Source: Oopsacas minuta
Taxonomy: Eukaryota > Animalia > Porifera
Reading direction: 5' to 3'
Length of the DNA: 64,000 nt
Assembly (NCBI GenBank): GCA_024704765.1
Contig: JAKMXF010000303.1
Coordinates: forward strand, 251,266-315,265
Positions 4,401 through 37,772 of this stretch are shown here, in pieces. The notes beneath the pieces are model-generated. The model was not told where the DNA came from. It did no database searches and was given only the letters and a program-made list of their open reading frames with translations. The translations under genes and the position numbers were made by a program. How positions within the stretch are numbered: position 1 is the first letter of the stretch; the number at the start of each line of letters is the position of its first letter.

Positions 4401-5721
4401 TGTCATAGGCGTAGAGTTCCTGAAATCCCAAGGGGGCGAAAAGTCTTCAACTCATATCCAATCTCTGTCCAGTAATATCACAACTACGTATTTAATTGCA
4501 TGCAAAGGATTACAAATATGCATTTTTCTTGGATTCTAGGCCCAAAAAGGTTCATCATATTAATTACAAGTAAAGTTCCCAAAGAATTTTGACCAAAACC
4601 AAGAAGTTCGTTTTTGAGCTCTTAGAACCCTTTAAATCGAGAAATATTTCAAACCCCTGATTAGGGAACTACTGTATTTCCCCAATAAGCTCCGGAAGCC
4701 GCTAGAAAAAGGCTCCAAGATTTGTGAATAAAATTCATCACCTCCCTCTAGAAGAAATGTTTGATGAAATATCCGTCTGTTTCCCCGAATCATTGTATTT
4801 CAAAATTTGTAAAATACGAAAAATACTCACGGAAAGAATAAGCACCTGAGCACTTATTCAGGGAAATAAGATATACAGAATAGTGATTAGTATAGTGCAA
4901 TCACAGCGGAAATATATACTTAATATTCTTCATTATTACCATATGGTTAAATTGACTGAGCAAAACTTATTATAGTGATACCAGAGTAAGATTGGGGGGT
5001 GTCATCTAGAAAATTTTGCAGGGCAGCCCCCCTGCCCCCCTAAACTCTACGCCTAAGATATTTGTGCTTATTTCATTATCTCATTCATTTCCAGTAATTG
5101 TATTGGAAATTTATGATAAGGACAGTGTAAGTAGTCCGTACTTCCACCCATCCCTTTGGTTGTGGGAATCTAAAGCTGGACACGATTACACGAAATTACC
5201 ATACATTTTGACGAATTTTCTAAAAGGTGAATATTGTCACACCTCTGAAGTGTAATTAAATTATGATTCGATAGGATGAACACCATCGGTCTATTGACTG
5301 ACATTTACCTAAAATTTTCTTATCAGCGCCGGTGTTATTCTATACCCCATCTCAGTTTCCAAAACCAGAGCTTTTCTTGGCAATAATCTTCTATTGATCT
5401 CCGTCCTACTCTATCAGCAAGCAGTGCAATGCTACTACCGTCTATCTTTATATTAGTGTGTATGATCACTTCTATTTTAATACTTGTAAACGTCCAGCTT
5501 CTTTGTACATTGTATATACACTTAATTCTTGTAATATTGACTTTATTATCGTGTACTTATTTAGTTTGCAAAGGAGTCTATGTGAGTTTTCTAAATGGAA
5601 TCTGATTCTACCTCAAGACAATCAGTACATCAAAATAGTAATTCCTGAAAGTTTTTTAGTTTGCCACACAGTGAGCACCTGGAATATATTGATTGAATAC
5701 TCGAAACAAATGCAAGCTTGA
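1456..5721 (+). CDS. RNF213 (mysterin)-like giant E3 ligase, C-terminal exons (5' partial)
   Basis: Phase-compatible GT-AG exons 1456-1720, 1918-2197, 2608-2805, 3245-3334, 4204-4379 and 5565-5721. The joined peptide (ILTSLINLLVNIHNSF..HQLINYTDQLDNLILSN..YDFIGIQREFCDRFMFNKP..ISLIELVISF..CYLKHLLSLWQKLS..IPESFLVCHTVSTWN) resembles the RNF213 C-terminal region (LIRLHNEI..HVISYEVERDLTPLILSN..DLEKIQRQIVSRFLQGKP..CQLKHTIALWQFLS..FPEEILLASCVSVW). Confidence 0.75.
1740..1871. mobile_element. Tc1/mariner(pogo)-type MITE in an RNF213-like intron
   Basis: Imperfect TIR CAGGGGACTCCCC / GCGGAGTCTATTG, TA on the left side, inner inverted repeat TAATCGGGTCAC / GTGACCCCATTA. Confidence 0.5.
3443..3906. mobile_element. 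hAT-type MITE (intronic)
   Basis: Termini CAGGGACGT / ACGTTCCTG with 8-bp flanks CTAAGGTG and TTAAGGTG (7/8 match, TSD). Confidence 0.7.
4404..5057. mobile_element. hAT-type MITE with perfect 8-bp TSD (intronic)
   Basis: TIR CATAGGCGTAGAGTT / AACTCTACGCCTAAG; ATATTTGT at both 4396-4403 and 5058-5065. Confidence 0.9.
4672..4871. mobile_element. Tc2/pogo-like MITE nested inside the 4404-5057 hAT element
   Basis: TIR CTGTATTTCCCCAATAAGC / CACTTATTCAGGGAAATAAG, TA-flanked. Same family as 22010-22180 and a fragment near 27901. Confidence 0.75.
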
Positions 5722-9585: not shown

Positions 9586-10406
9586 CTCTCTAATTCAATT
9601 CCTATATTACCCACTATATATGTTGTATTTACCATGGCAATAAGGTTCTTGCTGTCAGGATTCTTAATTCGATCATCTATCTGAGGTCAACGCATGATAA
9701 TATCCAATCTAATATTATTCTCTATTCTATGATACTAATTTTTAAAATGTTAAGTTAGATATCTTTTGCATTACACTCCTATAAATACAGCGAGTAATGT
9801 TGCATGAAATCATATGTAGAATTCGGTCTAAAATCTGTGAAATTTCATGAACTGCTTTGCCCATTTTTGATAATAATTAGTTTGAGGCATCCATCTTAAC
9901 ATCTGGGGCGGTGGTGGAATTTCGGATCAAGTAGAAATAGCATTATCCGGCACTTATTAAGATGAAAAAGATTGATAGGTGAGAATTGTTCCTGAATTAT
10001 TTATGTGATATAATGCAATTCATGAGTGTCTGTAGATTATGCAAGCTCTACTAGACGAATGAAAGTGGTGATAAATTCAGTTCTATTGTCCGATTCAATG
10101 CTGTGTAGCTGAATCAATAAATGCGAGAAAACTTGTTTCAGCTCCACTACCTGCATGAATTAGATAAATCTCATGCGGGTGGCGGAGCTAAATAAAATTC
10201 CACATATTGTCCTAAAGTCCATCTTATACGATGCAATTGTTGCATGCGACAAAGTTGCATTATGTATGGCGTGCTAAATACGAATTGCTTGGAGTTATTA
10301 AATAAATAATTATCGACCCGGTAAAGATCAAACTCAATTCGAAAATCGTTTTGATTTTGTTAAACGAACAATACACGATTGTATAATAAATATAATTACT
10401 AATCGA

Positions 10407-10655
10407 TCAACTTTCATTTTCTTGATCTTGATCTTGTATTAGCGGTTTAAACTTGGAATCTCCAAACGTCTTATTCTCTATTTCCTGTAGATACCTCTCG
10501 TTACGGATCTCTTCTATGCTCTTACCCTTGATCTTCCTCCTAGGTGGTCTGATGTAAGATTCTACTGAATACCCGACTAAACCGATCAGGACTGTGAGTG
10601 GGAGGAGGAGGATTGGTGCATACCCACGGGATATATTTGCTAACAATGCCCACAT
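10407..10655 (-). CDS. SMIM12: Small integral membrane protein 12 (UPF0767)
   Basis: MWALLANISRGYAPILLLPLTVLIGLVGYSVESYIR..KSIEEIRNER resembles SMIM12 [46 protein letters not shown]. Confidence 0.85.
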   Translation of the reverse strand: MWALLANISRGYAPILLLPLTVLIGLVGYSVESYIRPPRRKIKGKSIEEIRNERYLQEIENKTFGDSKFKPLIQDQDQENES

Positions 10656-11387
10656 TATATAGTGTATAAGTACCGTGATGGAGAGAAAGGAAAAGAGAGC
10701 TCACTGGTAAAATAGATCTACCAAAGCTAAAATACAAATTTGTATATGTATGTGATTTAATGGAGATTTAACAAGCGAACATTATAATTTGTAATGACTG
10801 ATGAGGAAATATTTAATTAAGTTATAAATCAGCTTGTTGCCATTAATTCCACAGACTTTCATAGCTTGAAGGGAGACCACTTTGTTGTAGAACAGGAAAT
10901 TTGAATTCCTAATAGAATTGCTGTGAATATCATAGTAGAATGATTTCTATCCTTATACTTTACAACAATGCCATTGGGATTGTCAAACTCTCCTATTCCT
11001 GATATCTCTTCACAATTACAACAACTCGAATTGTGTTTCCTTGATAAATCTCAGAAATGAGAAATTCGAATTCGATACAACATTCCATAAATCCTTCCCT
11101 TGACAACTCACAAACTGACATACAAACAAACAAACAAACAAACAAAAATGGCAACTTAATATAGATAGATATAAATTCGTTTGCACGTAAACTGCAAAAA
11201 ATTAATTTCAAGTATTAAATAAATTCCAACACTAACCGTCTAATCCTGTAAAGTACTCCAATCAAGTGAACAAGTAAAAATATTGTTGCGGAATTAATTG
11301 CGGGATTTCTATCATAAACCTAATCAATGAATAACAGCTACTACTGGCAGTATATACGAATGATGAGATGAAGTAGGATAGAATGTA

Positions 11388-13070
11388 ATGCCTGGTAAGC
11401 GTACAGCTGAAGTATACACCTACATAAATTCTGACGGGGAGTGGGACAGCTTAATTTCCAGCACACATGGACTCCTTGTGATAGAGATACATGCAGAATG
11501 GTGTGGTACGTGTAAAGCATTACATGGAATATTCAAGAGATTCACATTTGAACATCTTGGTGATATACATTTCGCAGCAGCAGCAGCAGAATCTATTTCA
11601 TATCTAGAGGCTTATAGAGGGAGATGTCAACCTACTTTTCACATGTACGCGAGTCAAGTATTGGTAGGAGTTATTCACGGATCCAGAGGAGCACAGATTC
11701 AAGAAAAGATGCTAGAATTACTACAGAAAGAGAAGGACATAGCCTCAGGAGAGGGAGTTAGAATAGAAGTTGTTGATAGCGAATCTCAGCTATATCCATT
11801 GGATATAGCTGAGATGAGAGAGAATCAGGGATTGGTTCTGGAGCTAGAGGAAAAGGAAGTAACTGTAGTTGTCATAAAACCTGATGTAGTGAAGGCGGGT
11901 AAAGTAGAAGAGATAATGGAAGAGATAAATGATAAAGGAATACAAGTATTAGCTAGAGAGGAGTTAATACTAACTGGGAGCTTTGTAGAGGAGCTGTATA
12001 TTCATCTCAGGGACCAACCACAGTTTCCAGATCTGGTTGCATTCATGACAGGGGGTCCGTCTGTCTGTCTAGCTCTCACACAGTCCAGTAACAAGGATAA
12101 GGGTATAGTAGAGGAGTTCAGGAATATAATCGGGCCCTATGATGCAGAGCTAGCTCGAGTAGAAGCTCCCACTTCTCTACGAGCTAAGTACGGTACAGAC
12201 GCGATTTATAACGCTATACATGCTAACAGTACACGTGAACAGGCTGCTAGAGAACTGGCATTCTGTTTCCCGAAGCTAGGAGGAGACAAGAGGGGAGAGA
12301 TACAGAGGATACTAGCACTGGTACGTCTGGACTCTCTGAAGAAAGACAAAGAAGAGATCCTGTGTCAGATCAGAGAGGCCAGGTTTGAAATAGCCTGTAT
12401 TAGAGAGATAAGCTTTGGACAGGATAAGCTACACGAGTTAAGTGAGCAGGACGGCAGTATGAGTAGCTACATTACTAAATACATGATTGATACTCCTGTA
12501 TTAGCTCTCTGTCTGTGTAGAGAAGATGCAGTACAGGGATGGTTGGAGATGATAGAGGGAGATAAGGTAGAGAGCGTATGTGAAGAGCAGAATACAAAGG
12601 TGTTCTACGGATCCTCACAGGAAGCAGAGGTTGAACCAGATTTAGATCTAATCTTCCCTGTAGACCAGACAGTAGCTGTTATCAAGCCTGATGCTATGGA
12701 ACACAAAGATCAGGTCTTGAAGAGGATTGAGGATTCAGGTTTCCATATTGCCATGCAGAAGGAAACAGAACTTTCACAGGATTTAGTCAGTACTATATAT
12801 CAGAACAAGAATGAGAGTGATTACTATGATTCACTAGAAGAATTCATGTGTAGTGGTCCCTCACTTATGCTAGTACTCTCTAAGAGAGATGCAGTCAACA
12901 ATTGGAGGAATTTGATAGGACCAGTTGATCCTGTAGAGGCACAAGAAATAGCCCCCACCTGTCTCAGAGCTATTTTCGGTAAGGATATCCTGGAGAACAG
13001 ACTACACGGATGTTCTAGTAGAGAACGAGTAGATGATCTGATTAAAGTTATATTCGAAGATAACCAGTAG
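11388..13070 (+). CDS. NME8: Thioredoxin + three NDK-domain protein (NME8/NME9, dynein IC-like)
   Basis: N-terminal Trx fold (WCGTC) followed by three NDK repeats (TVVVIKPD..NAIHANS, a degenerate middle domain, TVAVIKPD..NRLHGCS); single exon. Confidence 0.85.
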   Translation: MPGKRTAEVYTYINSDGEWDSLISSTHGLLVIEIHAEWCGTCKALHGIFKRFTFEHLGDIHFAAAAAESISYLEAYRGRCQPTFHMYASQVLVGVIHGSRGAQIQEKMLELLQKEKDIASGEGVRIEVVDSESQLYPLDIAEMRENQGLVLELEEKEVTVVVIKPDVVKAGKVEEIMEEINDKGIQVLAREELILTGSFVEELYIHLRDQPQFPDLVAFMTGGPSVCLALTQSSNKDKGIVEEFRNIIGPYDAELARVEAPTSLRAKYGTDAIYNAIHANSTREQAARELAFCFPKLGGDKRGEIQRILALVRLDSLKKDKEEILCQIREARFEIACIREISFGQDKLHELSEQDGSMSSYITKYMIDTPVLALCLCREDAVQGWLEMIEGDKVESVCEEQNTKVFYGSSQEAEVEPDLDLIFPVDQTVAVIKPDAMEHKDQVLKRIEDSGFHIAMQKETELSQDLVSTIYQNKNESDYYDSLEEFMCSGPSLMLVLSKRDAVNNWRNLIGPVDPVEAQEIAPTCLRAIFGKDILENRLHGCSSRERVDDLIKVIFEDNQ

Positions 13071-13832
13071 ATATCAGTTGTAGTATAGATACATGTATAT
13101 TGTGTAATTATGATAACTCTTAAATATCCGCTATTAATTACGTGTGTTATCAATATTAACCCATCATTACATCCTCTCACATTCCAGTGTACACAAGTGG
13201 CACTCTGAATTATACGGGTACATGACCGGACATCTCTATGCAGAGATATGTGTTCAGGAAGGGGTTTACATGCCAGTGATTGGATAACAGTGGATACGAT
13301 TTGAAATATTCTGAACAAAAATGTTATACAGAACTGTTTACTTTTGTACTGATAGCAAACATGTATAAAGAGAAAATATCTATTTCATTTCAATTACGTA
13401 GAACTCAGATTAGTCGTACCTTCGGGAAACTAAAATTAATACGCACTATCCGAGTGTACGTCTTATCCGAATAGGGTTTGTATAAAATGATTGGAAACTA
13501 ATTTTATGGTTTGATAGTTTGTATTAATTAAACAAGTCAATGTCTTATCCGAGTTATACCGTATGAATGACTGCTGCAGAGTTAATATTTAAAATGGGTA
13601 GGCAAGGTGAATAACAGACATACGATGTAACAAAAAGTTGTGTTACCCATTGGGTTGGTATTGTATTCGCTAATTTGTATTAATTAATACGAGTATGTAG
13701 TATGTCTGATTTAATATAATTATATCCGTTGAGACGATCGACAATACTAATATATTCCAATAGCACATAATTATTAATGATGTCACATGAATTATTATAG
13801 TCATAGAGTACCATCTACACTACTGTATTGCA

Positions 13833-16800
13833 TCAGTGTCTGTATCTCTCTTTCTCTCTGTACCGATCTGAGTAAGATCTATGACGTGGATCTTCTGGGG
13901 AGCGAGACCGATCCCGTCTACTATCTCTCTCATAATCTCTCTTCCTTTCCCGGTCTCTATCTCTATCATGTCTGTGTCCACGATGTCTGGATAAGTATAA
14001 TAATTATTAAATTTAACACTATGTAATTGAATACTAATGGTATTATACATGCCTGGAGCTTGAACTGCTTCTGGAATGATATCGCTTCTCTATATCCTTC
14101 ATCCGTTCGTATAGAGACTCTATGACTAGCTGATTACCGTTTGAGTCAGGACCTGACTGCTTCACTAGGGATATAGCAGTACGTAGCGTGTCAATAGCAG
14201 AGTCATAATTCCCCAGATTTGATTCTGCTACAGCTCTCTGAATTGCGTTATATGACACAGCCTTGTTACGCTGAGTAGCATCATTGTCTTCAATTCCTTA
14301 TACAGAATAGTATAAATACTGATTGTAAATAAATAAATATTTGATTTTATTGTATTGTATTTAGAAACACATAGGATGATATTTTAAGTCTTATTCACCT
14401 AACCTAAAAGAGAGAAGAATATAAATATCCGAGATTAATACAGCAACGGATACAACTCACATAGCTGACTGTGAGAACATCTCAACCTACAATAAAGTGA
14501 GTTATAATTAGATGAAGTAGTTATCATCAGCTATGTATATGTACTACATACATGAGGCTGTGCTCCTGAGAAGAAGGCTGGATTAACGTGTGGAGCTAGG
14601 CCCTTGGTGCCTCCCAATCCTCCCAATACTATACAATAGAATAATATTTAACTGGTGATATAGTAAGGTTAGTTAGTTAGCATACCTCCTGCATGTAGAG
14701 ATACCTGCGGTACGGGAGGAGGGAGTCCAGCTAAGGTAAGACCAGGGGGAGGAACATGGTGAGGGGGTATAGGAGGGAGGAGTTGTGATGGGTCTGCTAT
14801 GAGAGGTCCTGTAGCTGAGAGGACAGGAGGAGGAGGTAGACCTGCGTAAGTTTGTAGACCTACATACATCTAGTATAATATAATTACCATATAATTACTC
14901 AGGATAAGTACCTATAGGTCCTGCTGGTGGAAACATAGTTGGAGCTGAGAAGGCCTTTACTTCTGTAGATTTCTTCATTGTATTCTGACCTGCTTTCATA
15001 GGACCTCTCCCGCCTTTAGAATCTGATGCTAGATTGTGTGACGTATAAATTAAGAAGGATACATAGGTATAATAGAATCACTAGAATGTAATCTTACCTT
15101 CTCTGGACCTCTGCTCAAACTGGTGAGCACTCGTCTTGGAAGCCATAGCTAATACTGGAATCTGGCCATGGATAACACTAAATGAGTTCAATTAAGTTTT
15201 GGGTGAACTTCGTTGAATGAATTTAATCACGGAATTATGTTTATTCTAGGCTCATGTACTCACCAGTCTTTTAGCTTCTCCACTGCTTCTTGTGCTGTCT
15301 CCTCGTTCTTTAGCTCGATTAGAGCAAACCTAAATTTAGAAACATCGTTTTAATAGCGAATACACTACCTCTATGCTGTGATATAATACCTTATCAACTA
15401 GTTGTACAGGAGCATACTCTTTATGTATAATTATTAATATATAATTTTAATTACCCTTTAGATTGTCCATTTGCTCTATTTTCGAAGAATTTAATAGCCT
15501 TAACTTCCTGGAATTCATTCTCCTTCAACAGCTGAACTAAGTCTACATCAGTTGTCCACTAAATGAGAATATTTGATATACAAACAGAAATCAGTGTGTA
15601 AATTCATAGTAAGTATAGAAACTTAATGTTATAATTGAATTTAATAAATTTTCCAAAAACATACAGAATTATACTAAAATACAAATACGTAGTACATTAC
15701 AAATGTAGTATTTCTATCCCTTATATCGGTATAACAGAATTAACTATATAGCTATCATGTAATACAAATGCTATATTGAAGTCCAGATGGAGAGATGACT
15801 GTCTTTAGCCTTCAGGGCAAATTCAGCATTTAACAATATATGCAATAAATCTACACAAAATCGCTACAGCCATCTTATCAGATACAGCATGAGGTATGTA
15901 GTAATACAAAATGCGCTTAGTTACAAGCCCACCAAGTGGGATTACAAACAATTTTGATCTATACAATTTGACGTATAACTATCCGTTAAGTAACAGAAGG
16001 TAGTATAGCATAAATTAACACAAAATAATCAGCTAAATACCCATGTCAGGTTGCCAATGAAGATGGCGTTCCTCTTATTTGGGTCAAATGAGATCCCTAG
16101 TGTAGAGTTGTCCACTGAAGTGCTCTGAGAAGTTTTTCCAGCAGGAATTCCCTCCTGTGTCTGTTTGGATAACAGCTCTGCCTTAAGCCGAGCTGACTCT
16201 GGTTAGAGAGAGTTTGAAATACAAGCATTCGAGAATGTTCACAACATAGTGTCATTTCAAAAAGTACAATTATTCGAAATGTGAAAATTATATCTATATA
16301 TGTTAGTTATTAATTATCGCTGTATAGTAGTGATAATATAATGTTTACCTCCTAATTCTTCGTTGTTATTGTCAGCCTCAAGTGCCAGCTATAATGTAGA
16401 CAAAATATTATATAAACGTGTGCAGACATTCGCAAGAAGGCTGGAAGATTTTGCGGCCAGGGTCATCACCAACCTGACAGTTTCCGCCGATCCTGGCACC
16501 TAACATTCGATTATTTTATATTTCCACAAGTACTGTCAAATCAGGTTAAAACGAAGCTTAAGTGACTGCAATTATTTCGTATTTCAATATAATCGATGAA
16601 ATAAATGTTACTTCGACGCTTTGGGTCCTTATTGTTATAATTTCAGACTTGGATATAAGCGGGTGTTTGGATATATCCGTATTCGATATAAATGAAGTCG
16701 ACTGTATATACAGTGAACTCCCGTTAAAACGAAGTGATTCTCTAGCCCCTATAACTTTGAAAGTAATTGATTTTACTCCGCTTATAACGAAGTGAAATCG

Positions 16801-28227: not shown

Positions 28228-29184
28228 TTAGACCTCTTGAGGAGCTCCCTCATATTCTAAGATTTTTGGCAACTTGTTCAAATTATTAACGTCATACATA
28301 GACAAGTCACATACAACCTCTTCTTTAGCTCGCTCCCGTTTGTAGAGAATATTAAAATGTCTCCTTCCTACTATGAAAATGAACAATACTAGAATAATTG
28401 TAGCGAATATTATCCCAATGATTACCAAAATAACAAGGATGACTAATAGCATAATCACCAGGACGTGTGAGTTCCCTCCCATGTTACAAGATGTTCCTGT
28501 CCCGGTACATCCGGTACATCCGGTACAGCCTCCACACCCACCTCCGTATAAAGGCGCCACTGGGTAGTAGTACCCCATGTGACAAGGATACCCGAACCAA
28601 CAGCAGTACAAACCTAAGAAAGGAACGTTTGGATCTCTACAACAGCTCGGAGCTTGACAGCACAGACAGAAGCTGCCTACGATAATACCAATAATACCGA
28701 GACTAGCAAAGAAGAATACTATACCAGCAAGATAGTACACACCCACTTGTGTAGCAACAGGCCACGATTCATATGGAAACAGATGCCAGATGTTCCTACC
28801 AGCTGCTATGTCAAGTCCATAGCTAATAGCAGACATCGCCACTATCAGGAGCTCTACTATGATAAGAAGAGTCAGAATGTCACGTGTCAATAGCATGCAG
28901 AGCTTCACACGTTTGGACACACGTGGCTCCTTCATACACAAGCGGTATTCGTAAGTACAGGTATTACAGTGTGTGAAACAAGTTAGGTTATAGTTAGTAG
29001 CACGCCAGTTATCGAGACATTTCCTGTGAACCCATTTAGAAGACCCTGTACACAAGCAAGGAGCAATAAGCCCTGCACCTCCATCGAAACAGATCCTGCA
29101 AATGTCTCCTTGATTTACATCCTCTTCTAAAGTGCTATAGTTACCTCCACGGACTTTGTAACAGCCACAACATCCTGTTGGCAT
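28228..29184 (-). CDS. RING-CH (RINGv) membrane E3 ligase of the plant/protist-type Cys-rich family
   Basis: CRICFD..LIAPCLCTGSSKWVHRKCLDNWR..CNTC, TRDIL, multiple TM segments, a Cys/Gly-rich loop and RRHFNILYKR. First ATG is at 29184; the ORF-track start is a TTG. Confidence 0.85.
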   Translation of the reverse strand: MPTGCCGCYKVRGGNYSTLEEDVNQGDICRICFDGGAGLIAPCLCTGSSKWVHRKCLDNWRATNYNLTCFTHCNTCTYEYRLCMKEPRVSKRVKLCMLLTRDILTLLIIVELLIVAMSAISYGLDIAAGRNIWHLFPYESWPVATQVGVYYLAGIVFFFASLGIIGIIVGSFCLCCQAPSCCRDPNVPFLGLYCCWFGYPCHMGYYYPVAPLYGGGCGGCTGCTGCTGTGTSCNMGGNSHVLVIMLLVILVILVIIGIIFATIILVLFIFIVGRRHFNILYKRERAKEEVVCDLSMYDVNNLNKLPKILEYEGAPQEV

Positions 29185-29673
29185 TTCTCTAACTAAAAGA
29201 AATCTATAGTAGAGTAAGTTGAGTACTAAATCACTTCTAAACTTCAGTAAATTCGCAATAGGTGAAACAAATTTTGAGGATTCCGATAGTAACAAGTTTG
29301 TATGGTAGATTGTAAGTATTTCAATAAGGGTATGTCATAAACAAGTTGAAATCAGAATTCGTGTTCTTCCATATGCCAAAACAGGCCAACAATGAATGGG
29401 AAGAACTCATTGTCGTTTAACATCAAATTATTGAATTAAGTAAATTAGACACCAGCAGAGCAAAAGCAAAGAAGTGATTTTAATTAATAGAATAAATTAT
29501 TCGAATGTATAAACAGGTAAAATACTACAATAATATAAAATAGGAGTAAACATAACTAAACATGAATTCAAAAGAACTAAGAGGTGAGGTGCAGGAGTGT
29601 TGTAAGTGAGATGTCAGATTGATGGTAAGTAGTGCCAGTTAGTTGAAGAAAGCTCGTTTTCACACAGTTGAGA

Positions 29674-32203
29674 ATGTACCAGTCAGAGAAAAGGAAGGAA
29701 AACCGTTGGAATTAGGGAGGTCTACATTCTTTCCATGTTCCCCTACCCCTCAGGGGCTCTCCACATGGGGCATGTGCGTGTGTACACCATCAGTGACACA
29801 CTCGCACGCTATCACAGAGCCAGAGGTGAGAGTGTGCTACACCCGATGGGCTGGGATGCATTCGGTCTGCCAGCAGAGAACGCAGCCATCGAGAGAGGAC
29901 TGAGTCCAGTCGAGTGGACACAGACCAACATCAGTCAGATGCGTCAGCAACTGAATCAGCTGAACTTCCAGTTCGACTGGGAGAGGGAAGTGACCACGTG
30001 CAGACCCGACTACTACCGCTGGACACAGTGGCTGTTCACACAGCTGTATCGTCATGATCTGGCCTATCAGAGGGAAGCCTACGTGAACTGGGATCCTGTG
30101 GACGGGACAGTACTGGCCAATGAACAGGTGGATGCTGAGGGGAGGTCGTGGCGGTCCGGTGCAAGGGTAGAGCGTAGACGACTGAACCAGTGGTTCGTAC
30201 GTCTCACACACTACAGAGAAGCCCTCCTGAAGGGTCTAGCCGAGCTGGACTGGCCGGAGAAGGTGAAGCAGATGCAGCGGCACTGGATCGGTCGAGCTGA
30301 GGGGTATCTGATCAGTTTCCAGTTACAGGAAGGAGATGGCAGTGTGAGGGAGGGCGACAAGAGACAGGAGCCGTTGAGGGTATTCACTACCAGCCCAGAG
30401 AAGCTCTTGGACACCACCTTTCTGGGTGTGTCACGTGAACACGCGTTGAGTGAGGGGTATTCGCGTGATACACACCTGAAGCACACTTCCAGCAGTGAGG
30501 CAGACTGTGAGAGGGAGGGCATCAGGCAGGAGACGGTGAGAGGCGAACTGCTACCAGTTCGAGCTGTCCATCCTATTACTGGTGAGCTGCTACCTGTACT
30601 CAAGTTGGACCATGTGGTACAGGAGTATGGCACGGGTGTGGTGATGGGTGTACCGGCTCGCAACAAGAGAGATGCTCGTGTGGCAGAGCACTGGGGCTGT
30701 GCTGCTGTATCGGGAGTAGCTCTCTCTCCGGATGGTACTCGCGTACAGTCCGGTGACATGCTGGGGATGAGTGTGGAGGATGCACGGGGTGTTATCCTGT
30801 CTCAGAACTGGATTCAGGCTAGTGAGCAGTTCCGTCTACGTGACTGGCTCATCTCACGACAGCGCTACTGGGGCTGTCCTATCCCGATGGTACACTGTCC
30901 CACATGTGGGACCATCCCTGTGCCTGAACAGGAGCTGCCTGTCCTTCTACCGACTGACCTGCAGCTGACGGGTAGAGGCAGTTCCCCGCTACGCACCTGT
31001 CAACAGTTCACGTCTACTGTCTGTCCTCAGTGCGGCAGTCTACACGCACAGCGGGAGACAGACACCATGGATACGTTCATCGACTCTTCCTGGTACTATA
31101 TGCGCTATTGTGACCCTCAGAATGGATCAGCACTGTGTGGAGTAAAGGCAGCACGCCGCTGGCTACCAGTAGACACGTATATCGGCGGGATTGAGCATGC
31201 AGTTCTCCACTTGCTGTATGCACGCTTCGTGAGCCACTTCCTCTACGACTTGGGCGTGTCACCTGAACCGGAGCCTTTCAGGAAGCTGATCACCCAGGGC
31301 ATGGTGACCGGCAAGACATACCGGCTGATCGGCTCCCTGCGTTACATCCAGCCCGAGCAGGTGGAGACAGGAGCGGGAGGGGTGCTGGTAGAGAGGGGCT
31401 CACAGCAGAGGGTGGAGATGTTCTGGGAGAAGATGTCCAAGTCGAAGTACAACGGTGTGAATCCACAGGTTATGGTGGAGAAGTACGGCGCGGATGTAGT
31501 CAGGCTGTTCCTACTCTTTAAGTCACCCCCACATCTGGACCTACAGTGGGATGAGACGGCCATTGTGGGCATTGTACGCTGGAGGGCTAAACTGGAGGGA
31601 ATACTCGCTGAGCACGTCCGCCACTACCACGCCAGTCAGGATACACACAGGGAGACTGCACCTGCTGACGGGGAGGTGCTAGAGGGCCTGGAGTCACTCA
31701 CCCAGAGAGCAGTACATGTTTCTACACAGGCTATGACGCACATCTTCAACTTCAACTCCCTCATCGCCCAGCTCATGAAGCTCACCAACTATATACGCAA
31801 GCACAAGGATGTGCTGTCTGGCACACACGCATGCCAGCACAGTCTGAGGACGCTACTGGCGCTCTTACACCCCATGGCTCCACATATCTCCACTGATCTC
31901 TGGAGCCGACTGGAGAGGGATACATACTCGCCAACCATCCGTGCCATGTGTCGCGGTATCAAGGCAGACACTGCAGGCCAGGAGCACCAGGGAGCAGGCA
32001 AGCCTATCCCATTCTCTGTCCTGCTGGACAACCAGTGGGTGTGCACTATCTATATCCCCCTGGGTGTCACAGACTCAGAGGAGGGCATACGTCAGGCAGT
32101 ACTAGCACACCCGTGTGTACAGGCGGTATTGGGGGGTCAGCAGCCCTGCAGAATGGTCTCTCAGATCAATCAGAAAACTATTGTATTGATCACCAAAGAA
32201 TGA
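29674..32203 (+). pseudogene. LARS2: Mitochondrial leucyl-tRNA synthetase copy 2: 5'-truncated/frameshifted (ATG 29674 out of frame; open from 29735)
   Basis: HMGH and KMSKS motifs are present and the protein matches the minus copy from MFPYPSG to KTIVL. One extra A (GGAAAACC versus GGAAACC) at about 29699-29702 breaks the frame from the ATG equivalent to MYH of the other copy. Functional status is uncertain. Confidence 0.75.
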
Positions 32204-34745
32204 GTAGTAAGGAATTCATTCCTAGATTGAGGCTCTCACCTCAATCTAGGCTACTTACTACTCATTAAATAATACAATAGTTTTCTGATTGATCTGAGAG
32301 ACCATTCTGCAGGGCTGCTGACCCCCCAATACCGCCTGTACACACGGGTGTGCTAGTACTGCCTGACGTATGCCCTCCTCTGAGTCTGTGACACCCAGGG
32401 GGATATAGATAGTGCACACCCACTGGTTGTCCAGCAGGACAGAGAATGGGATAGGCTTGCCTGCTCCCTGGTGCTCCTGGCCTGCAGTGTCTGCCTTGAT
32501 ACCGCGACACATGGCACGGATGGTTGGCGAGTATGTATCCCTCTCCAGTCGGCTCCAGAGATCAGTGGAGATATGTGGAGCCATGGGGTGTAAGAGCGCC
32601 AGTAGCGTCCTCAGACTGTGCTGGCATGCGTGTGTGCCAGACAGCACATCCTTGTGCTTGCGTATATAGTTGGTGAGCTTCATGAGCTGGGCGATGAGGG
32701 AGTTGAAGTTGAAGATGTGCGTCATAGCCTGTGTAGAAACATGTACTGCTCTCTGGGTGAGTGACTCCAGGCCCTCTAGCACCTCCCCGTCAGCAGGTGC
32801 AGTCTCCCTGTGTGTATCCTGACTGGCGTGGTAGTGGCGGACGTGCTCAGCGAGTATTCCCTCCAGTTTAGCCCTCCAGCGTACAATGCCCACAATGGCC
32901 GTCTCATCCCACTGTAGGTCCAGATGTGGGGGTGACTTAAAGAGTAGGAACAGCCTGACTACATCCGCGCCGTACTTCTCCACCATAACCTGTGGATTCA
33001 CACCGTTGTACTTCGACTTGGACATCTTCTCCCAGAACATCTCCACCCTCTGCTGTGAGCCCCTCTCTACCAGCACCCCTCCCGCTCCTGTCTCCACCTG
33101 CTCGGGCTGGATGTAACGCAGGGAGCCGATCAGCCGGTATGTCTTGCCGGTCACCATGCCCTGGGTGATCAGCTTCCTGAAAGGCTCCGGTTCAGGTGAC
33201 ACGCCCAAGTCGTAGAGGAAGTGGCTCACGAAGCGTGCATACAGCAAGTGGAGAACTGCATGCTCAATCCCGCCGATATACGTGTCTACTGGTAGCCAGC
33301 GGCGTGCTGCCTTTACTCCACACAGTGCTGATCCATTCTGAGGGTCACAATAGCGCATATAGTACCAGGAAGAGTCGATGAACGTATCCATGGTGTCTGT
33401 CTCCCGCTGTGCGTGTAGACTGCCGCACTGAGGACAGACAGTAGACGTGAACTGTTGACAGGTGCGTAGCGGGGAACTGCCTCTACCCGTCAGCTGCAGG
33501 TCAGTCGGTAGAAGGACAGGCAGCTCCTGTTCAGGCACAGGGATGGTCCCACATGTGGGACAGTGTACCATCGGGATAGGACAGCCCCAGTAGCGCTGTC
33601 GTGAGATGAGCCAGTCACGTAGACGGAACTGCTCACTAGCCTGAATCCAGTTCTGAGACAGGATAACACCCCGTGCATCCTCCACACTCATCCCCAGCAT
33701 GTCACCGGACTGTACGCGAGTACCATCCGGAGAGAGAGCTACTCCCGATACAGCAGCACAGCCCCAGTGCTCTGCCACACGAGCATCTCTCTTGTTGCGA
33801 GCCGGTACACCCATCACCACACCCGTGCCATACTCCTGTACCACATGGTCCAACTTGAGTACAGGTAGCAGCTCACCAGTAATAGGATGGACAGCTCGAA
33901 CTGGTAGCAGTTCGCCTCTCACCGTCTCCTGCCTGATGCCCTCCCTCTCACAGTCTGCCTCACTGCTGGAAGTGTGCTTCAGGTGTGTATCACGCGAATA
34001 CCCCTCACTCAACGCGTGTTCACGTGACACACCCAGAAAGGTGGTGTCCAAGAGCTTCTCTGGGCTGGTAGTGAATACCCTCAACGGCTCCTGTCTCTTG
34101 TCGCCCTCCCTCACACTGCCATCTCCTTCCTGTAACTGGAAACTGATCAGATACCCCTCAGCTCGACCGATCCAGTGCCGCTGCATCTGCTTCACCTTCT
34201 CCGGCCAGTCCAGCTCGGCTAGACCCTTCAGGAGGGCTTCTCTGTAGTGTGTGAGACGTACGAACCACTGGTTCAGTCGTCTACGCTCTACCCTTGCACC
34301 GGACCGCCACGACCTCCCCTCAGCATCCACCTGTTCATTGGCCAGTACTGTCCCGTCCACAGGATCCCAGTTCACGTAGGCTTCCCTCTGATAGGCCAGA
34401 TCATGACGATACAGCTGTGTGAACAGCCACTGTGTCCAGCGGTAGTAGTCGGGTCTGCACGTGGTCACTTCCCTCTCCCAGTCGAACTGGAAGTTCAGCT
34501 GATTCAGTTGCTGACGCATCTGACTGATGTTGGTCTGTGTCCACTCGACTGGACTCAGTCCTCTCTCGATGGCTGCGTTCTCTGCTGGCAGACCGAATGC
34601 ATCCCAGCCCATCGGGTGTAGCACACTCTCACCTCTGGCTCTGTGATAGCGTGCGAGTGTGTCACTGATGGTGTACACACGCACATGCCCCATGTGGAGA
34701 GCCCCTGAGGGGTAGGGGAACATGGAAAGAATGTAGACCTCCCTA
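29713..34745. repeat. Giant inverted repeat: arms 29713-32187 and 32271-34745 (2,475 bp each), 83-bp quasi-palindromic spacer
   Basis: Mirror coordinates sum to 64458 at both ends, so there is no net indel. All mirrored ORFs in alternative frames translate identically, and spot-checked segments show no mismatch. Confidence 0.98.
32221..32250. other. Perfect 12-bp stem / 6-nt loop hairpin at the palindrome centre
   Basis: CCTAGATTGAGG-CTCTCA-CCTCAATCTAGG, flanked by a second 13-bp pair AATGAGTAGTAAG / CTTACTACTCATT. Confidence 0.95.
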
Positions 34746-34783
34746 GCCCCAACGGTTTCCTCCCCCTTCTCGTCATGATACAT
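32258..34783 (-). CDS. LARS2: Mitochondrial leucyl-tRNA synthetase copy 1 (intact frame; true start may lie upstream of 34783)
   Basis: [61 protein letters not shown] and KMSKSKYN. First in-frame ATG is 34783; the frame stays open to 35185. Confidence 0.95.
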   Translation of the reverse strand: [841 protein letters not shown]

Positions 34784-35264
34784 TCTCAGGTTTGTGTGAA
34801 ATAGTGATGAGCTTGATTTGTTAGTAGGCACCTTATAGTTCGAATAATTATGTTGCGGAATATATCCACGCCGAATTTCCTTTATAATACATTTTCCATT
34901 GAGAAGACCTCCTGCACCCCATAGCCTCTGATTCTGTCGCGAATGAAGAAAACGATGCAGAGCAGATGAGAATAAATATTGCCCCCTATCTGGGGTTGAG
35001 TATTTGAAGTGATGTAGTTGTGAAAAACTAAGTGATCTGTGTGAAGATTGGAATGTAAAATTGAAATTTTTGGTAACAATAGGTAAGGCAATAAATGGTA
35101 TAGAAATATTTGAGGAATAAATTTGTGGTTTGATATAAAGTATAAGCGTACTAATGAATATCAGAAAAAGAATGGTAATCAATCTTTATAGCTATACATT
35201 ATTACGTAAGTATTTTGATGATTACACAAGATATTTAGGACAAAAAGAACTTAAAATGATAAAA

Positions 35265-35529
35265 GCACCACGATGCAACTTTGTTGCATGAAACAAGGCA
35301 ACATGCGCGGTGCAACAATGCAAAATTATCATGCAACATTGTTGGAGAAAACAGAACATGTTATTTCCATGCAACAAGTTTCTTACAACATTGTTGCATA
35401 CAAGATACAACTCTGGCCATATAGGGTGTAACAAATTTGCCCCCAAAATTCATGCAACAATGTTGCAAGCAATCTTTTGCATGGAAAATTTAATATACAC
35501 GATGCAACAGTTGGCATCGTGGATGGTGC
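35265..35529. mobile_element. Non-autonomous DNA element with internal ATGCAACA/TGTTGCAT repeats (Harbinger-like?)
   Basis: Termini GCACCACGATGCAAC / GTTGGCATCGTGGATGGTGC; the motif is repeated many times inside, with a related stretch near 10230-10260. No TSD resolved. Confidence 0.55.
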
Positions 35530-36245
35530 AAAAATAAATTGATAAGAAGAATTCTTTTCTTTAAAGAATAAACGCAATCTGTTGTCTAAATAAGTAAATA
35601 CTAAATACACAGAAATCAAACATTTAGCTGGGTGGTTTTCCACGATTTGCCATAAAATAAAACTAGAGCAAGGCATATGATATATGTGAACCAGAGTCAT
35701 ATAGATTATTCAGAGCACGCTCCTAAATATAATTTCATCAAAATCATACACCTAGAAGAGCGTTAGGCGCGCGGGGCAGTCCTAGATAATTACTTGATGT
35801 GAACGGTTGTTTTAATTGGAGAATATATGAAAAGCGTGAGAAGAAAGTAAACAACAATGATTGCATAAGAAAATAAAGTGCCTATAGTAAATTTTACTAT
35901 ATTGATCTAAATTAGGGAGAAAAGCCAAGACAGGGGTGGATTGGGGACTTAAAGCGGCCTCGCCAAATAGTCCTAAACCAATTATGTTAGTCAACACACA
36001 CCGGTCCACTAGCTCACCAGCTCACTAGCCTATCAGTCCATACGACCACCAGCCCACTGGGCATTTGCTAGGTATCTTGGTGGCCCAATCTGCCTATGGG
36101 CCCGGGTCTAGCTATATCACTTCCATCTCAAGTGACAGGTGTTTGTAGCGAACATAAACAGTAACTAACTATACTAACTATATAAGATAACACAACTAAG
36201 GTTAAAATATAAATGCAAAGAATAAGTTAAGGAGCGGGGAGAAAC

Positions 36246-36329: not shown

Positions 36330-37772
36330 CTAAGTTTGACTGAATCTTTTGCATAAGAGTGAGTCTGGGTCTGAATTGGTAAATACGAAGTCATTAGAGA
36401 TAAATGTTTCTTCGAAGTATATAGGGTGGTGAATCGGTTCATCAGTTATATGACTTGGGAGAATGTCTTGATCACTGACGAGCCAAGAGTCGAAATCAAG
36501 AGGAAGATTAGCAAAGTATAAAAGGTCGTTTTCAGGATATTCCATAGAATCCTCGTCAGAACCAGTTTCTATGAATCCGTTAGGGAATGCAGAGAGTAGG
36601 AGAGCTGCTTGTGTATCACTGGGCTCAGAGGCTGGTCTAGGTACCTGCTTCATAACATTAACAGACTCCATTACACATTGGAAGCTACCTACTTCCTCTA
36701 CATGTACGTGTAGCTTGGAATCATTCATAATAGCGTTATCTTTGTTAAGTAATGGGATTATAGGAGGTTGAGGTTGTGGATCTAGCTCCCAGTGCTCATA
36801 TACTTGTTTATACATATCTAGATCAAAATCTGGAAGTAGATGAGCCTGGTTATAGAACAGATAGCAATTGTATACGGCGTGTCTGAGACAGTCAGACCAA
36901 CAACGGAGCCTCTTACTATCCATGAGACGCTGATCAGTTTTGATGTTTTGCCAGGGTACACAGCCTGGCCACCAGTCAGGAACCATGGATGGGTTATGCC
37001 ACTGCGGAGTCTTCCTCCCCTCTGCTTCACACAGTAACATCCGGAGGAATGATCTCAGTTGAGCTTGAGTCATCTCCTCCACAGAAGTAGGGATACCATG
37101 GATTAGGATGGGTGGCAGAATATTAGAGACTGATTTGAAATTTATATCAAATTTACTCGCTACTCTCTTGTGCATCTGCTTCAATTTACGATGAGTATTC
37201 TTTTGTATGTGGTGTGCGTACTTGCTAACATACTCTTTGATAGGAGAGGTCCCGAATATCTTCATAGCGTTAGTGGGATTTACCTCACTCGGTTCATAGA
37301 CAACTACTGTTGCCTGAAGACCTACATGCATTGAGAACTGGTGGAGTAGATCTTCTAACTGCTGCACATACTGGGCATACAGCTTCTTTCTAATCTCAGG
37401 ATTTTTCTCGAACACAACACTCGGTTCCTTGTGACGGCCACTCGAGATAGCAGCAATGGAAGACATCCCTGCAATGCCTTGCTGACAGAGCTCTTGGAAC
37501 AAGGGACCCTCTTCGCTGTCTAGAAGGAACATCTTATTGGAATCCTTCCTGATCTGACCTGTTGATTTTATACTCTCCAATTTGCGACGTCTCTTCAGAT
37601 CATTCCGCTCTCCATGACAGTGTCTCTGTTTAGCCCGCTTCTGCAGAGAGCCCAGCTGATTAGTCTGCCTCTTGCAACAATCCTTTCTCTCTGAGTAGGA
37701 GGAACTAGAGTTCACAAGTAGAGGACAACTCTCAGTTTTATTTTCTACATTTTGTGTATTAGTGTCAGCCAT
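36330..37772 (-). CDS. NRF1: Nuclear respiratory factor 1 / EWG family transcription factor
   Basis: VGLQATVVVY, KIFGTSPI, MTQAQLRSF, PDWWPGCVPWQNIKTDQR..WSDCLRHAVYNCY match the NRF1 DNA-binding domain. Confidence 0.9.
   Translation of the reverse strand: MADTNTQNVENKTESCPLLVNSSSSYSERKDCCKRQTNQLGSLQKRAKQRHCHGERNDLKRRRKLESIKSTGQIRKDSNKMFLLDSEEGPLFQELCQQGIAGMSSIAAISSGRHKEPSVVFEKNPEIRKKLYAQYVQQLEDLLHQFSMHVGLQATVVVYEPSEVNPTNAMKIFGTSPIKEYVSKYAHHIQKNTHRKLKQMHKRVASKFDINFKSVSNILPPILIHGIPTSVEEMTQAQLRSFLRMLLCEAEGRKTPQWHNPSMVPDWWPGCVPWQNIKTDQRLMDSKRLRCWSDCLRHAVYNCYLFYNQAHLLPDFDLDMYKQVYEHWELDPQPQPPIIPLLNKDNAIMNDSKLHVHVEEVGSFQCVMESVNVMKQVPRPASEPSDTQAALLLSAFPNGFIETGSDEDSMEYPENDLLYFANLPLDFDSWLVSDQDILPSHITDEPIHHPIYFEETFISNDFVFTNSDPDSLLCKRFSQT

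What the first reader, a model, noticed from the sequence alone, without database searches (positions are those of the whole stretch)
29713..34745. Self-correcting genic palindrome: two tail-to-tail mitochondrial LeuRS genes with apparently identical 2.5-kb arms
Seen: the arms mirror with no net indel and give identical translations in all listed frames, so synonymous sites appear to match too. Yet homology continues outward as clearly diverged sequence, and the centre is asymmetric. A fresh duplication or a fold-back read would not leave diverged shoulders. Known: arm-to-arm gene conversion maintains palindromic genes on mammalian Y/X chromosomes. Inference: an old inverted duplication of an essential housekeeping gene kept homogeneous by intrachromosomal conversion with almost no spacer, which is unusual.
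Basis: partly seen in the sequence, partly recalled or inferred. Interest (0 to 1): 0.9.

Follow-up and report, generated by a model that had tools for sequence, protein, structure and literature searches.

The report
Ancient conversion-maintained LeuRS gene palindrome
The mitochondrial leucyl-tRNA synthetase gene of this animal sits tail-to-tail with a beheaded mirror copy of itself, and related species show that the pair is very old yet has been kept almost identical by repeated copying between the two halves.

Summary
Arms 29713-32187 and 32271-34745 are 2475 nt each with no mismatch, around an 83-nt hairpin-like spacer and ~65-nt diverged outer shoulders.

It is not an assembly artefact. 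In two independent short-read runs the flanks lie at 68-75x, the arms at 128-149x and the centre at 74-90x.

The same palindrome occurs in at least five related lineages:
- One contig carries it whole, with arms 98.5% identical.
- A second, 5.7-kb contig also carries both arms (99.9%).
- Two contigs of one assembly overlap exactly through the centre.
- Two further contigs stop just past the centre.

Core arms are 98.5-100% identical within a genome but 67-84% between most lineages. The core tree pairs arms by genome (100/100; p-AU 1.5e-78 against pairing by type). The outer shoulders instead group by arm type across species (94/94). So this is one old inverted duplication followed by concerted evolution.

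One correction: only the minus-strand copy is a full gene. The plus-strand copy lacks at least 85 upstream codons, and its shoulder decays in every species.

GC3 is high in the arms (0.64 vs 0.38), but biased conversion is only moderately supported.

This is a new member of a known kind. First-stage notes, unchecked, report other such palindromes in this genome.

The parts
29645..29712 (+). Outer shoulder of the truncated copy (P arm). It is diverged homology to 34746-34813, with an in-frame stop 13 codons upstream of the VYILSM motif.
   Evidence: It groups with the P-type shoulders of other species, not with its own partner.
29713..32187 (+). P arm: perfect inverted copy of the main LeuRS exon. 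The ORF 29735-32203 gives 822 aa starting at MFPYPSG, with no upstream coding extension.
   Evidence: About twice the flank depth in runs X2 and X3.
32188..32270 (.). Asymmetric 83-nt spacer. It is a nested imperfect hairpin and holds the two different stop codons and last residues of the two copies.
   Evidence: (RNA fold -57.5 kcal/mol, z -10.3). Unitigs bridge both inner junctions at single-copy depth.
32222..32249 (.). Central stem-loop (11-bp stems of the GATTGAGG / CCTCAATC type around a 6-nt loop). Its core motif recurs at the palindrome centre in the L001, L002, L003 and L006 lineages.
32271..34745 (-). F arm: the main exon of the functional mitochondrial-type LeuRS gene, identical to the P arm.
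34746..34813 (-). Outer shoulder of the functional copy. It is coding and keeps the frame into the arm (..SSSLFHTNLRMYHDEKGEETVGAREV..).
   Evidence: It groups with the F-type shoulders of other species.
34814..34993 (-). Upstream coding extension present only in the F copy. It is conserved at about 50% amino-acid identity in four lineages (ALYRYL..IQGLWGAGG..KVPTN). The open frame runs on to 35182 without an ATG, so the start exon was not located.
28228..29295 (-). Flanking RING-variant (RINGv) gene, pointing away from the P arm. Context only.
   Evidence: Not syntenic in the relatives.
36330..37772 (-). Flanking NRF1-type DNA-binding protein gene, upstream of the F copy. Context only.

Best explanation
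This is a real and ancient genic palindrome.

Origin (shown to be old; mechanism inferred). In a common ancestor of at least six sampled lineages, the mitochondrial-type LeuRS gene underwent an inverted partial duplication. The copy ran from just upstream of the PYPSG/HIGH region to a short hairpin in the 3' end. That left a full gene (F arm, minus strand here) tail-to-tail with a copy that has no promoter, no start and no first 85 or more codons (P arm, plus strand). Fold-back priming at the conserved central stem-loop is my inference for how it arose.

Maintenance (pattern shown, molecular step inferred). Intrachromosomal arm-to-arm gene conversion, meaning homologous repair that uses the other arm as template, has repeatedly homogenised about 2.2-2.5 kb of the arms.

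Selection (inferred, with weak direct support). Purifying selection acts only on F. It filters what conversion spreads, so the P arm looks intact inside the tract while its unconverted outer shoulder decays.

Composition (moderately supported). Conversion appears GC-biased and probably contributes to the high GC3 of the arms.
For: (1) The structure is real.
- Arms have 0 mismatches over 2475 nt.
- Short-read unitigs of runs X2 and X3 give flanks 68-75x, arms 128-149x, and a centre unitig (32134-32324) at 74-90x. That unitig reaches 54 nt into both arms.

(2) The palindrome is conserved.
- L002 carries the whole palindrome, with arms 98.5% identical in the core and a 164-nt spacer.
- L004 and L005 are two contigs of one assembly with different flanks. 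Their last 103 nt are exact reverse complements, and their arms are 100% identical over about 2.2 kb.
- L006 carries both arms at 99.9%.
- The L001 and L003 contigs stop just past the centre; L003 ends where the identical arm would begin again.
- Run X5 (organism B) has one arm contig 1.8% different from the window, at about 3 times its flank depth.

(3) Evolution is concerted.
- Core identity is 98.5-100% within a genome and 67-84% between most lineages (92.8% for the closest pair).
- The core tree pairs arms by genome at 100/100. Forcing F arms together costs 1552 lnL units, p-AU 1.5e-78.

(4) There was a single old origin.
- The outer-shoulder tree splits P from F across species at 94/94.
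- The P-side neighbours are shared: Peptidase_M24 in L001, L003 and L005, and a 347-350-aa membrane protein in L001, L002 and L003.

(5) P is truncated and unconstrained.
- F copies keep VY[IV]LSMFPYPSGxLHMGH plus about 85 conserved upstream codons.
- P copies carry stops, two 1-nt deletions (L005), HKGH in place of HMGH (L007), and SKSHYPTG or LPTPPYPSG.
- In L002, arm-specific derived changes are 11 synonymous to 6 non-synonymous on F, and 4 to 10 on P (p = 0.07).

(6) GC.
- Arm GC3 is 0.64 against 0.383 +/- 0.045 for 13 other ORFs of the window.
- GC3 steps up inside the F reading frame at the arm boundary in four lineages.
- L002, whose arms have drifted 1.5% apart, fixed 66 S>W and 31 W>S changes. 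Its sister L003 fixed 55 and 72 (Fisher p = 2.6e-4).
Against: - No long read spanning the whole 5.1 kb was examined. Read laying returned only assembler contigs, which can hide rare variants, and the runs come from the same sample as the assembly.
- Run X1 shows arms at 4-5 times the flanks rather than 2 times. This is unexplained; GC bias of that library is a guess.
- GC3-rich single-copy genes exist next to the palindrome in relatives (M24 0.55-0.67; L004/L005 neighbours 0.53-0.62). The GC signal is therefore not specific to conversion.
- A comparison of unfixed with fixed changes for biased conversion was not significant (p = 0.64).
- The shoulder tree rests on only 93 columns.
- The window's own P-side flank is not syntenic with the relatives.
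- The start codon and first exon of F were not found, and no RNA data show which copy is expressed.
Confidence: 0.88

Rival explanations
1. Assembly artefact. A fold-back chimeric long read, or a haplotype mis-join, created a false mirror copy of a single-copy gene, and polishing made the arms identical.
For: Perfect identity and a tiny spacer are what a fold-back read would give. Four relatives' contigs break at the palindrome, so this region is hard to assemble.
Against: - Arms lie at about twice the flanks and the centre junction at single-copy depth in two short-read runs.
- The diverged shoulders exist as separate unitigs in those runs.
- The same structure occurs in independent assemblies of other species. 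One has arms 1.5% apart (L002), which no fold-back read would produce.
- Two contigs with different flanks overlap exactly through the centre.
Confidence: 0.02
2. Recurrent young duplications. The 3' hairpin of a single-copy LeuRS gene repeatedly primes fold-back inverted duplication, so each lineage has its own recent palindrome and no long-term conversion is needed.
For: A conserved central stem-loop sits at the centre in several lineages. Fold-back priming at short inverted repeats is an established route to inverted duplications (PMC10622511, abstract). Arms are nearly identical within each genome.
Against: - Outer shoulders group by arm type across species at 94/94, and the duplication breakpoint is in the same place.
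- Inner shoulders of L002 and L003 also match by type.
- P-side neighbours are shared across the deepest split.
- P shoulders carry accumulated damage that fresh copies would not have.
Confidence: 0.03
3. Two working genes. Both copies encode functional LeuRS proteins, for example with different N-termini or targeting, and identity is kept by selection on both as well as by conversion.
For: Both arms are open reading frames. The window's P copy starts with ATG at MFPYPSG and was annotated as an 822-aa protein. The two copies have different C-terminal residues.
Against: - P lacks the 85 or more conserved upstream codons. Solved bacterial LeuRS structures align from about residue 31-33 of the chain to residue 12-13 of the 841-aa annotated product, so an N-terminal segment is needed.
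- P shoulders in other species break the PYPSG/HIGH signature or the frame.
- Arm-specific changes on P in L002 are mostly non-synonymous.
Confidence: 0.05
4. Retained for a function of its own (this can coexist with the main explanation). The P arm is kept by selection for one of two reasons. Read-through of F into P gives a 2.5-kb hairpin RNA that feeds RNAi or editing and tunes LeuRS. Alternatively, P serves as a built-in repair template for an essential single-copy gene.
For: - A non-coding 2.5-kb copy is retained in all six sampled lineages, over about 0.7 substitutions per site of core divergence, in gene-dense loci.
- The central stem-loop is conserved.
- No canonical AATAAA or ATTAAA follows the F stop codon on its strand within the spacer (sequence read directly).
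Against: - No RNA or small-RNA data could be examined.
- Persistence can be explained without a function. Conversion repairs small lesions in P, and lesions that spread to F are removed by selection.
- Rfam finds nothing meaningful.
Confidence: 0.2

Closest known systems
Mammalian sex-chromosome palindromes (human and ape Y P1-P8; 12 primate X palindromes)
   Same: - Inverted arms around a unique spacer.
- Arm identity kept above 99% by arm-to-arm gene conversion.
- Orthologous palindromes shared between species.
- Arms richer in GC than flanks: 46.3% vs 41.2%, with inferred equilibrium GC of 60.9% vs 39.9% (PMC8981503).
   Different: - Arms here are only 2.5 kb with an 83-164-nt spacer, against tens of kb to Mb.
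- The cargo is one essential housekeeping gene, not testis-biased multi-copy genes.
- One arm is a truncated, non-coding copy.
- Chromosomal context is unknown.
- The lineages sharing it differ by about 0.7 substitutions per site, far more than human and macaque.
- Arm GC (56%; GC3 0.64) lies close to the equilibrium value inferred for primates rather than far below it.
Functional gene plus 5'-truncated inverted pseudogene in a low-copy repeat (IKBKG/NEMO with its partial pseudogene on human Xq28). Recalled from my own knowledge; no paper was retrieved.
   Same: An essential gene lies in opposite orientation to a partial copy that lacks the 5' end, and near-identity is attributed to gene conversion.
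   Different: The human repeats are tens of kb and separated by other sequence. They are young and are known mainly for pathogenic rearrangements. Here the pair is compact, tail-to-tail, and conserved across deeply diverged species.
Concerted evolution of inverted duplicate genes and organelle inverted repeats (Drosophila Amy and Hsp70 pairs, plastid IR copy correction). From general knowledge; see also the reviews PMC3924832 and PMC3924837 listed.
   Same: Coding cores are homogenised while flanks diverge. Synonymous divergence appears lower inside the repeat: LeuRS four-fold sites differ by 0.44-0.53 against 0.60-0.68 for the M24 neighbour.
   Different: In those cases both copies are functional genes, or the whole repeat is functional. 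Here only one copy is.
Experimental long palindromes and quasi-palindromes as fragile sites (yeast Alu-IR system, PMC8053094; PMC10164571)
   Same: Long, closely spaced, identical inverted repeats that can fold into a hairpin or cruciform. In this case the terminal loop is about 6 nt.
   Different: In yeast, fragility falls as the spacer lengthens and the arms diverge. This natural 5-kb quasi-palindrome has nevertheless persisted in every sampled lineage.

Membership tests
Gene-conversion-maintained palindrome (Y/X type) | Two inverted arms around a short unique spacer | tested here: met
   Arms 29713-32187 and 32271-34745 with an 83-nt spacer. Arm depth is about twice the flanks and the centre is single copy.
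Gene-conversion-maintained palindrome (Y/X type) | Arm-to-arm identity far above the identity of orthologous arms between species (concerted evolution) | tested here: met
   98.5-100% within a genome against 67-84% between most lineages (92.8% for the closest pair). The core tree pairs arms by genome at 100/100, p-AU 1.5e-78.
Gene-conversion-maintained palindrome (Y/X type) | The duplication is older than the species that share it, shown by unconverted parts grouping by arm rather than by species | tested here: met
   The outer-shoulder tree splits P from F at 94/94 on 93 columns. P-side neighbours are shared across lineages.
Gene-conversion-maintained palindrome (Y/X type) | GC enrichment of the arms caused by biased conversion | tested here: inconclusive
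   For: GC3 0.64 vs 0.38 in the window, a step inside the F reading frame, and the L002 vs L003 contrast at p = 2.6e-4. Against: M24 and the L004/L005 neighbours are also GC3-rich, and the unfixed-versus-fixed test gave p = 0.64.
Gene-conversion-maintained palindrome (Y/X type) | Spacer inversion through arm-to-arm crossover | tested here: inconclusive
   The centre of L006 is flipped relative to L001 and L007. However, L007 is a short-read scaffold and L006 contains frameshifts, so misassembly is not excluded.
Gene-conversion-maintained palindrome (Y/X type) | Large arms on a sex chromosome carrying testis-biased multi-copy genes | tested here: not met
   Arms are 2.5 kb and carry one housekeeping gene. 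Chromosome type is not testable here. This feature describes the mammalian examples, not the mechanism.
Gene plus truncated inverted pseudogene pair | The partner copy lacks the 5' coding part and is not under protein constraint outside the converted tract | tested here: met
   P copies lack 85 or more conserved codons and carry stops, frameshifts and HIGH-motif damage. In L002, P-specific changes are 10 non-synonymous to 4 synonymous.
Hairpin-RNA (endo-siRNA) locus | One transcript spanning both arms, and arm-derived small RNAs | not testable with these tools
   No run could be identified as RNA, and the single read-laying run returned assembler contigs only.
Assembly fold-back artefact | Single-copy arm depth, and absence from independent data and from relatives | tested here: not met
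Bacterial-type (mitochondrial) leucyl-tRNA synthetase | Class I catalytic core with HIGH (HMGH) and KMSKS motifs, the LeuRS-specific editing domain, and an anticodon-binding domain | tested here: met
   Pfam PF00133, PF13603 and PF08264. HMGH and KMSKS are visible in the translation. Bacterial LeuRS structures match at E = 4e-180. Mitochondrial targeting itself is inferred, because the N-terminus was not found.

The most novel reading that the evidence does not exclude
The truncated arm is not a passive passenger. It is kept by selection in every lineage because the gene and its mirror copy work as one unit. Either transcription reading through the 83-nt centre yields a 2.5-kb perfect hairpin RNA that feeds RNAi or editing and autoregulates mitochondrial LeuRS, or the copy serves as an on-site repair template that lowers the effective mutation rate of an essential gene on an ordinary chromosome. 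If first-stage notes of other homogenised inverted pairs in this genome hold up, this lineage may use such self-correcting palindromes widely.
Probability: 0.2. Interest if true: 0.8.

Novelty: new member of a known kind. Interest (0 to 1): 0.6.

Why it matters
Palindromes kept alike by gene conversion are best known from mammalian sex chromosomes. There they are huge, hard to sequence and only tens of millions of years old.

This one differs in useful ways:
- It is a 5-kb example that a single long read can span.
- It contains an essential housekeeping gene.
- It is shared by lineages whose core sequences differ by about 0.7 substitutions per site.
- The tract boundaries sit at different places in different species.
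- One lineage (L002) has arms that have begun to drift apart, with GC falling.

That makes it a small natural experiment for four questions:
- how fast conversion runs;
- how long its tracts are;
- how strong its GC bias is;
- how a gene coexists with a decaying partner without being poisoned by it.

It also bears on why a near-perfect long palindrome, a structure that is fragile in yeast models, can persist for so long.

On the practical side, it shows that contig ends falling just after a gene's stop codon in HiFi assemblies can mark real palindromes.

Tried and rejected
- Assembly artefact: rejected on depth, centre unitigs and relatives.
- Independent duplications per lineage: rejected by the shoulder tree and synteny.
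- Foreign origin (gene transfer or contamination) as the cause of the GC jump: rejected. The protein is an animal-type mitochondrial LeuRS. The AT-rich upstream part of the same reading frame is contiguous with the GC-rich arm. Relatives show the same pattern in their own genomes.
- Intron reading of the F shoulder: I first took a TACTAAC motif for a branch point. I dropped this because that stretch is conserved as protein in four lineages.
- Unfixed-versus-fixed test for biased conversion in L002: not significant (p = 0.64).
- Naming the organism: two protein searches gave only unnamed ENA relatives at 59-80% identity, with named animals at 40% or less (molluscs, bryozoan, sponges). The phylum stays open.
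- P0007 / L008, the next-nearest LeuRS: an AT-rich short contig with no palindrome. Uninformative.
- Rfam and tRNA scans of the locus: nothing above threshold.
- RNA evidence: no run could be identified as RNA.
- Literature: no paper links LARS2 to an inverted repeat with gene conversion, and no IKBKG pseudogene paper was retrieved.
- The A>G difference at 33665 between X1 and X2/X3: it cannot be read as a variant shared by both arms, because contigs pop bubbles and the runs share one sample.


Full report
**1. The observation**

The repeat finder finds one inverted pair in the region, 29700-32187 against 32271-34758, with 83 nt between the arms. It is the only repeat of 80 nt or more in the 64-kb window.

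A base-by-base comparison shows three mismatches, at 29710-29712.

Outward, homology continues for about 65-70 nt at roughly 75% identity with small indels.

The spacer is a nested, imperfect hairpin with about 10 extra bases on one side. As RNA it folds at -57.5 kcal/mol, z = -10.3.

The arms are 56% GC in a window that is 37% GC elsewhere.

**2. What the arms encode**

Each arm carries a long reading frame with the class I synthetase core, the LeuRS editing domain and an anticodon-binding domain. The HMGH and KMSKS motifs are present. Solved bacterial LeuRS structures match at E = 4e-180. This is the bacterial-type enzyme that serves mitochondria in eukaryotes.

The neighbours are animal genes: RINGv, an NRF1-type factor, Med15, an NME8-like protein and TMEM144. 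The nearest named relatives of an NME8-like protein from the window are animals at 40% identity or less. The phylum stays open.

**3. Is it an artefact?**

No. The single read-laying run used Logan contigs of three runs from one sample (X1-X3) and one run from a second organism (X5).

| Run | Flanks | Arms | Centre unitig |
|---|---|---|---|
| X2, X3 | 68-75x | 128-149x | 74-90x (32134-32324, 54 nt into both arms) |
| X1 | 217-271x | about 1080-1260x | 359x |
| X5 (organism B) | about 7x | 23x | 7x |

- X2 and X3 show what a de Bruijn graph gives for a true two-copy palindrome with a single-copy centre.
- Long unitigs run through the arms without bubbles, for example 1646 nt in X3.
- One site near the centre (32294) differs between the arms in X2 and X3.
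- X1 shows arms at 4-5 times its flanks. I cannot explain this; GC bias of that library is a guess.
- X5 has one 2422-nt arm contig that differs from the window at 44 sites.

These are contigs, not reads, and X1-X3 share a sample with the assembly. Spanning long reads are therefore still worth checking.

**4. Relatives**

A protein search found unnamed ENA proteins at 59-80% identity. I fetched their contigs.

- **L002** (a 1.7-Mb contig) holds the same tail-to-tail pair. Its arms are 9936-12348 and 12513-14925 with a 164-nt spacer. About 34 interior differences are spread evenly along them.
- **L004 and L005** are two contigs of one assembly with different flanking genes. Both end just after the LeuRS stop codon. 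Their last 103 nt are exact reverse complements of each other. Their arms are identical over about 2.2 kb, with diverged shoulders at both ends.
- **L006** (5.7 kb) carries both arms.
- **L001 and L003** contigs stop just past the centre. L003 runs through it and ends where the identical arm would begin again.

A near-perfect palindrome is a natural place for these assemblers to stop. L002 was probably resolved because its arms differ by 1.5%.

**5. Concerted evolution and a single old origin**

In the core (window 29800-32100 and its equivalents), arm-to-arm identity within a genome is:

| Genome | Arm identity |
|---|---|
| window | 100% |
| L002 | 98.5% |
| L004/L005 | 99.8% |
| L006 | 99.9% |

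Identity between lineages is 67-84%, and 92.8% for the closest pair.

- The maximum-likelihood tree of the core pairs arms by genome, every branch at 100/100. Holding the four functional-type arms together costs 1552 log-likelihood units (p-AU 1.5e-78). The distance from the window to L004 is about 0.68 substitutions per site.
- The 93 columns of the outer shoulders give the opposite picture. Six P-type shoulders and four F-type shoulders separate at 94/94, across species.
- The inner shoulders of L002 and L003 also match by type.
- Flanking genes on the P side are shared across the deepest split: Peptidase_M24 in L001, L003 and L005, and a 347-350-aa membrane protein in L001, L002 and L003. 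The window's own P-side flank differs.

Together these results show one duplication before these lineages split, followed by homogenisation of the core. This is the classical signature of arm-to-arm gene conversion.

**6. One gene and one beheaded copy**

In all four lineages where an F arm was recovered, it keeps VY[IV]LSMFPYPSGxLHMGH. Upstream of the palindrome it also keeps about 85 further codons, conserved as protein.

Bacterial LeuRS chains align from about residue 31-33 to residue 12-13 of the 841-aa product annotated for the F copy. The enzyme therefore needs that extra N-terminal part.

No ATG lies in this extension in any lineage, so a start exon remains to be found.

The other arm, on the plus strand here, loses homology about 65 nt outside the tract. 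What is left decays:
- a stop 13 codons upstream in the window;
- SKSHYPTG in L001;
- LPTPPYPSG in L003;
- HKGH in place of HMGH in L007;
- two 1-nt deletions in L005.

In L002, where arm-specific changes exist, those derived on F are 11 synonymous to 6 non-synonymous. Those derived on P are 4 to 10 (p = 0.07).

The edge of the identical tract sits at different codons in different lineages.

**7. GC content**

Evidence that fits biased conversion:
- Arm GC3 is 0.64 against 0.383 +/- 0.045 (maximum 0.46) for 13 other ORFs of the window.
- Inside the F reading frame, GC3 rises from about 0.3-0.5 upstream to 0.6-0.8 in the arm, in four lineages.
- L002, with drifting arms, fixed 66 S>W and 31 W>S changes. 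Its sister L003 fixed 55 and 72 (p = 2.6e-4).

These values can be compared with primate X palindromes, where arms are 46.3% GC against 41.2% in the flanks. The inferred equilibrium there is 60.9% against 39.9% (PMC8981503).

Evidence that weakens the inference:
- LeuRS has the highest GC3 in every locus, but the single-copy M24 neighbour reaches 0.55-0.67.
- Neighbours in L004/L005 reach 0.53-0.62.
- None of these lies in a local repeat.
- The comparison of unfixed with fixed changes was not significant.

I rate biased conversion as a likely contributor, not as shown.

Four-fold sites of LeuRS differ less between lineages (0.44-0.53) than those of M24 (0.60-0.68), although LeuRS is the less conserved protein. 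This is one comparator only.

**8. Mechanism**

Shown:
- The structure is real.
- The duplication is old.
- The core evolves in concert.
- One arm is truncated and its shoulder is unconstrained.

Inferred:
- The duplication arose by fold-back at the conserved central stem-loop.
- Homologous repair between the arms does the homogenising.
- Selection on F filters what spreads, so P is in effect refreshed from F.
- Lesions in P are either repaired from F or, if copied into F, removed by selection. That could keep P in place without any function of its own.

A direct function for P, as a hairpin RNA or as a repair template, is not excluded. I give it about 0.2.

**9. Comparison with what is known**

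The mechanism is that of mammalian Y and X palindromes, and of inverted gene pairs that evolve in concert. The gene-plus-truncated-inverted-copy layout recalls IKBKG and its partial pseudogene. That comparison rests on my own knowledge; no paper was retrieved.

What is unusual here:
- the small size;
- the near-absent spacer;
- the essential single-copy cargo;
- the non-coding partner;
- the depth of conservation.

In yeast, fragility of inverted repeats falls with spacer length and arm divergence (PMC8053094; PMC10164571). Long persistence of this quasi-palindrome is therefore notable.

I found no paper on a LARS2 palindrome.

First-stage notes of this scan, unchecked, list several other homogenised inverted pairs elsewhere in this genome. 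The phenomenon may be common in this lineage.

**10. Verdict**

| Item | Verdict |
|---|---|
| Observation | confirmed |
| Novelty | new member of a known kind |
| Interest | 0.6 |

Noticed in passing
window 35200-35550: A dense cluster of GTTGCA / TGCAAC dyads: 9 in 300 nt where 0.11 are expected. Several are arranged as TGCAAC-N3-GTTGCA. It lies upstream of the functional LeuRS copy and is absent from the matching regions of L002, L004 and L006.
   Followed up: partly
window 29300-35200, run X1: In run X1 the arms lie at about 1080-1260x against flanks of 217-271x and a centre of 359x. That is 4-5 times the flanks rather than the 2 times seen in X2 and X3. Library GC bias is a guess; extra copies in that library are not excluded.
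   Followed up: no
L006:3250-3440 compared with the last ~200 nt of L001 and of L007: In L006 the inner-shoulder type that adjoins the truncated arm in L001 and L007 adjoins the functional arm instead. This could be a real flip of the centre by arm-to-arm crossover or a misassembly. L006 has frameshifts and L007 is a short-read scaffold.
   Followed up: partly
L001:6116-7642, L003:4204-5661, L005:7637-9091: The single-copy Peptidase_M24 neighbour is GC3-rich (0.55-0.67) in AT-rich surroundings without lying in any local repeat. GC3 therefore varies among genes in these genomes for reasons other than palindromes.
   Followed up: partly
L001, L003 and L005: LeuRS compared with M24: Four-fold degenerate sites of LeuRS differ less between lineages (0.44-0.53) than those of M24 (0.60-0.68), although LeuRS is the less conserved protein (57-70% vs 78-82% amino-acid identity). 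This may reflect a lower synonymous rate inside the palindrome.
   Followed up: partly
L001:1867-2598 and 4285-5067: Two tandem SH2-domain genes share a 300-nt block at 96% identity followed by a 271-nt block at 81%. This may be another sharply bounded conversion tract, this time between direct repeats.
   Followed up: no
L004:5711-6280: A 30-nt tandem repeat array lies inside the BORA_N-domain gene of the most distant relative.
   Followed up: no
window 32294 and 33665: Contigs of X2 and X3 carry T at 32294, in the right arm only and 23 nt from the centre, and G at 33665. X1 and the assembly carry C and A. All three runs are labelled as one sample, so these may be haplotype differences.
   Followed up: no
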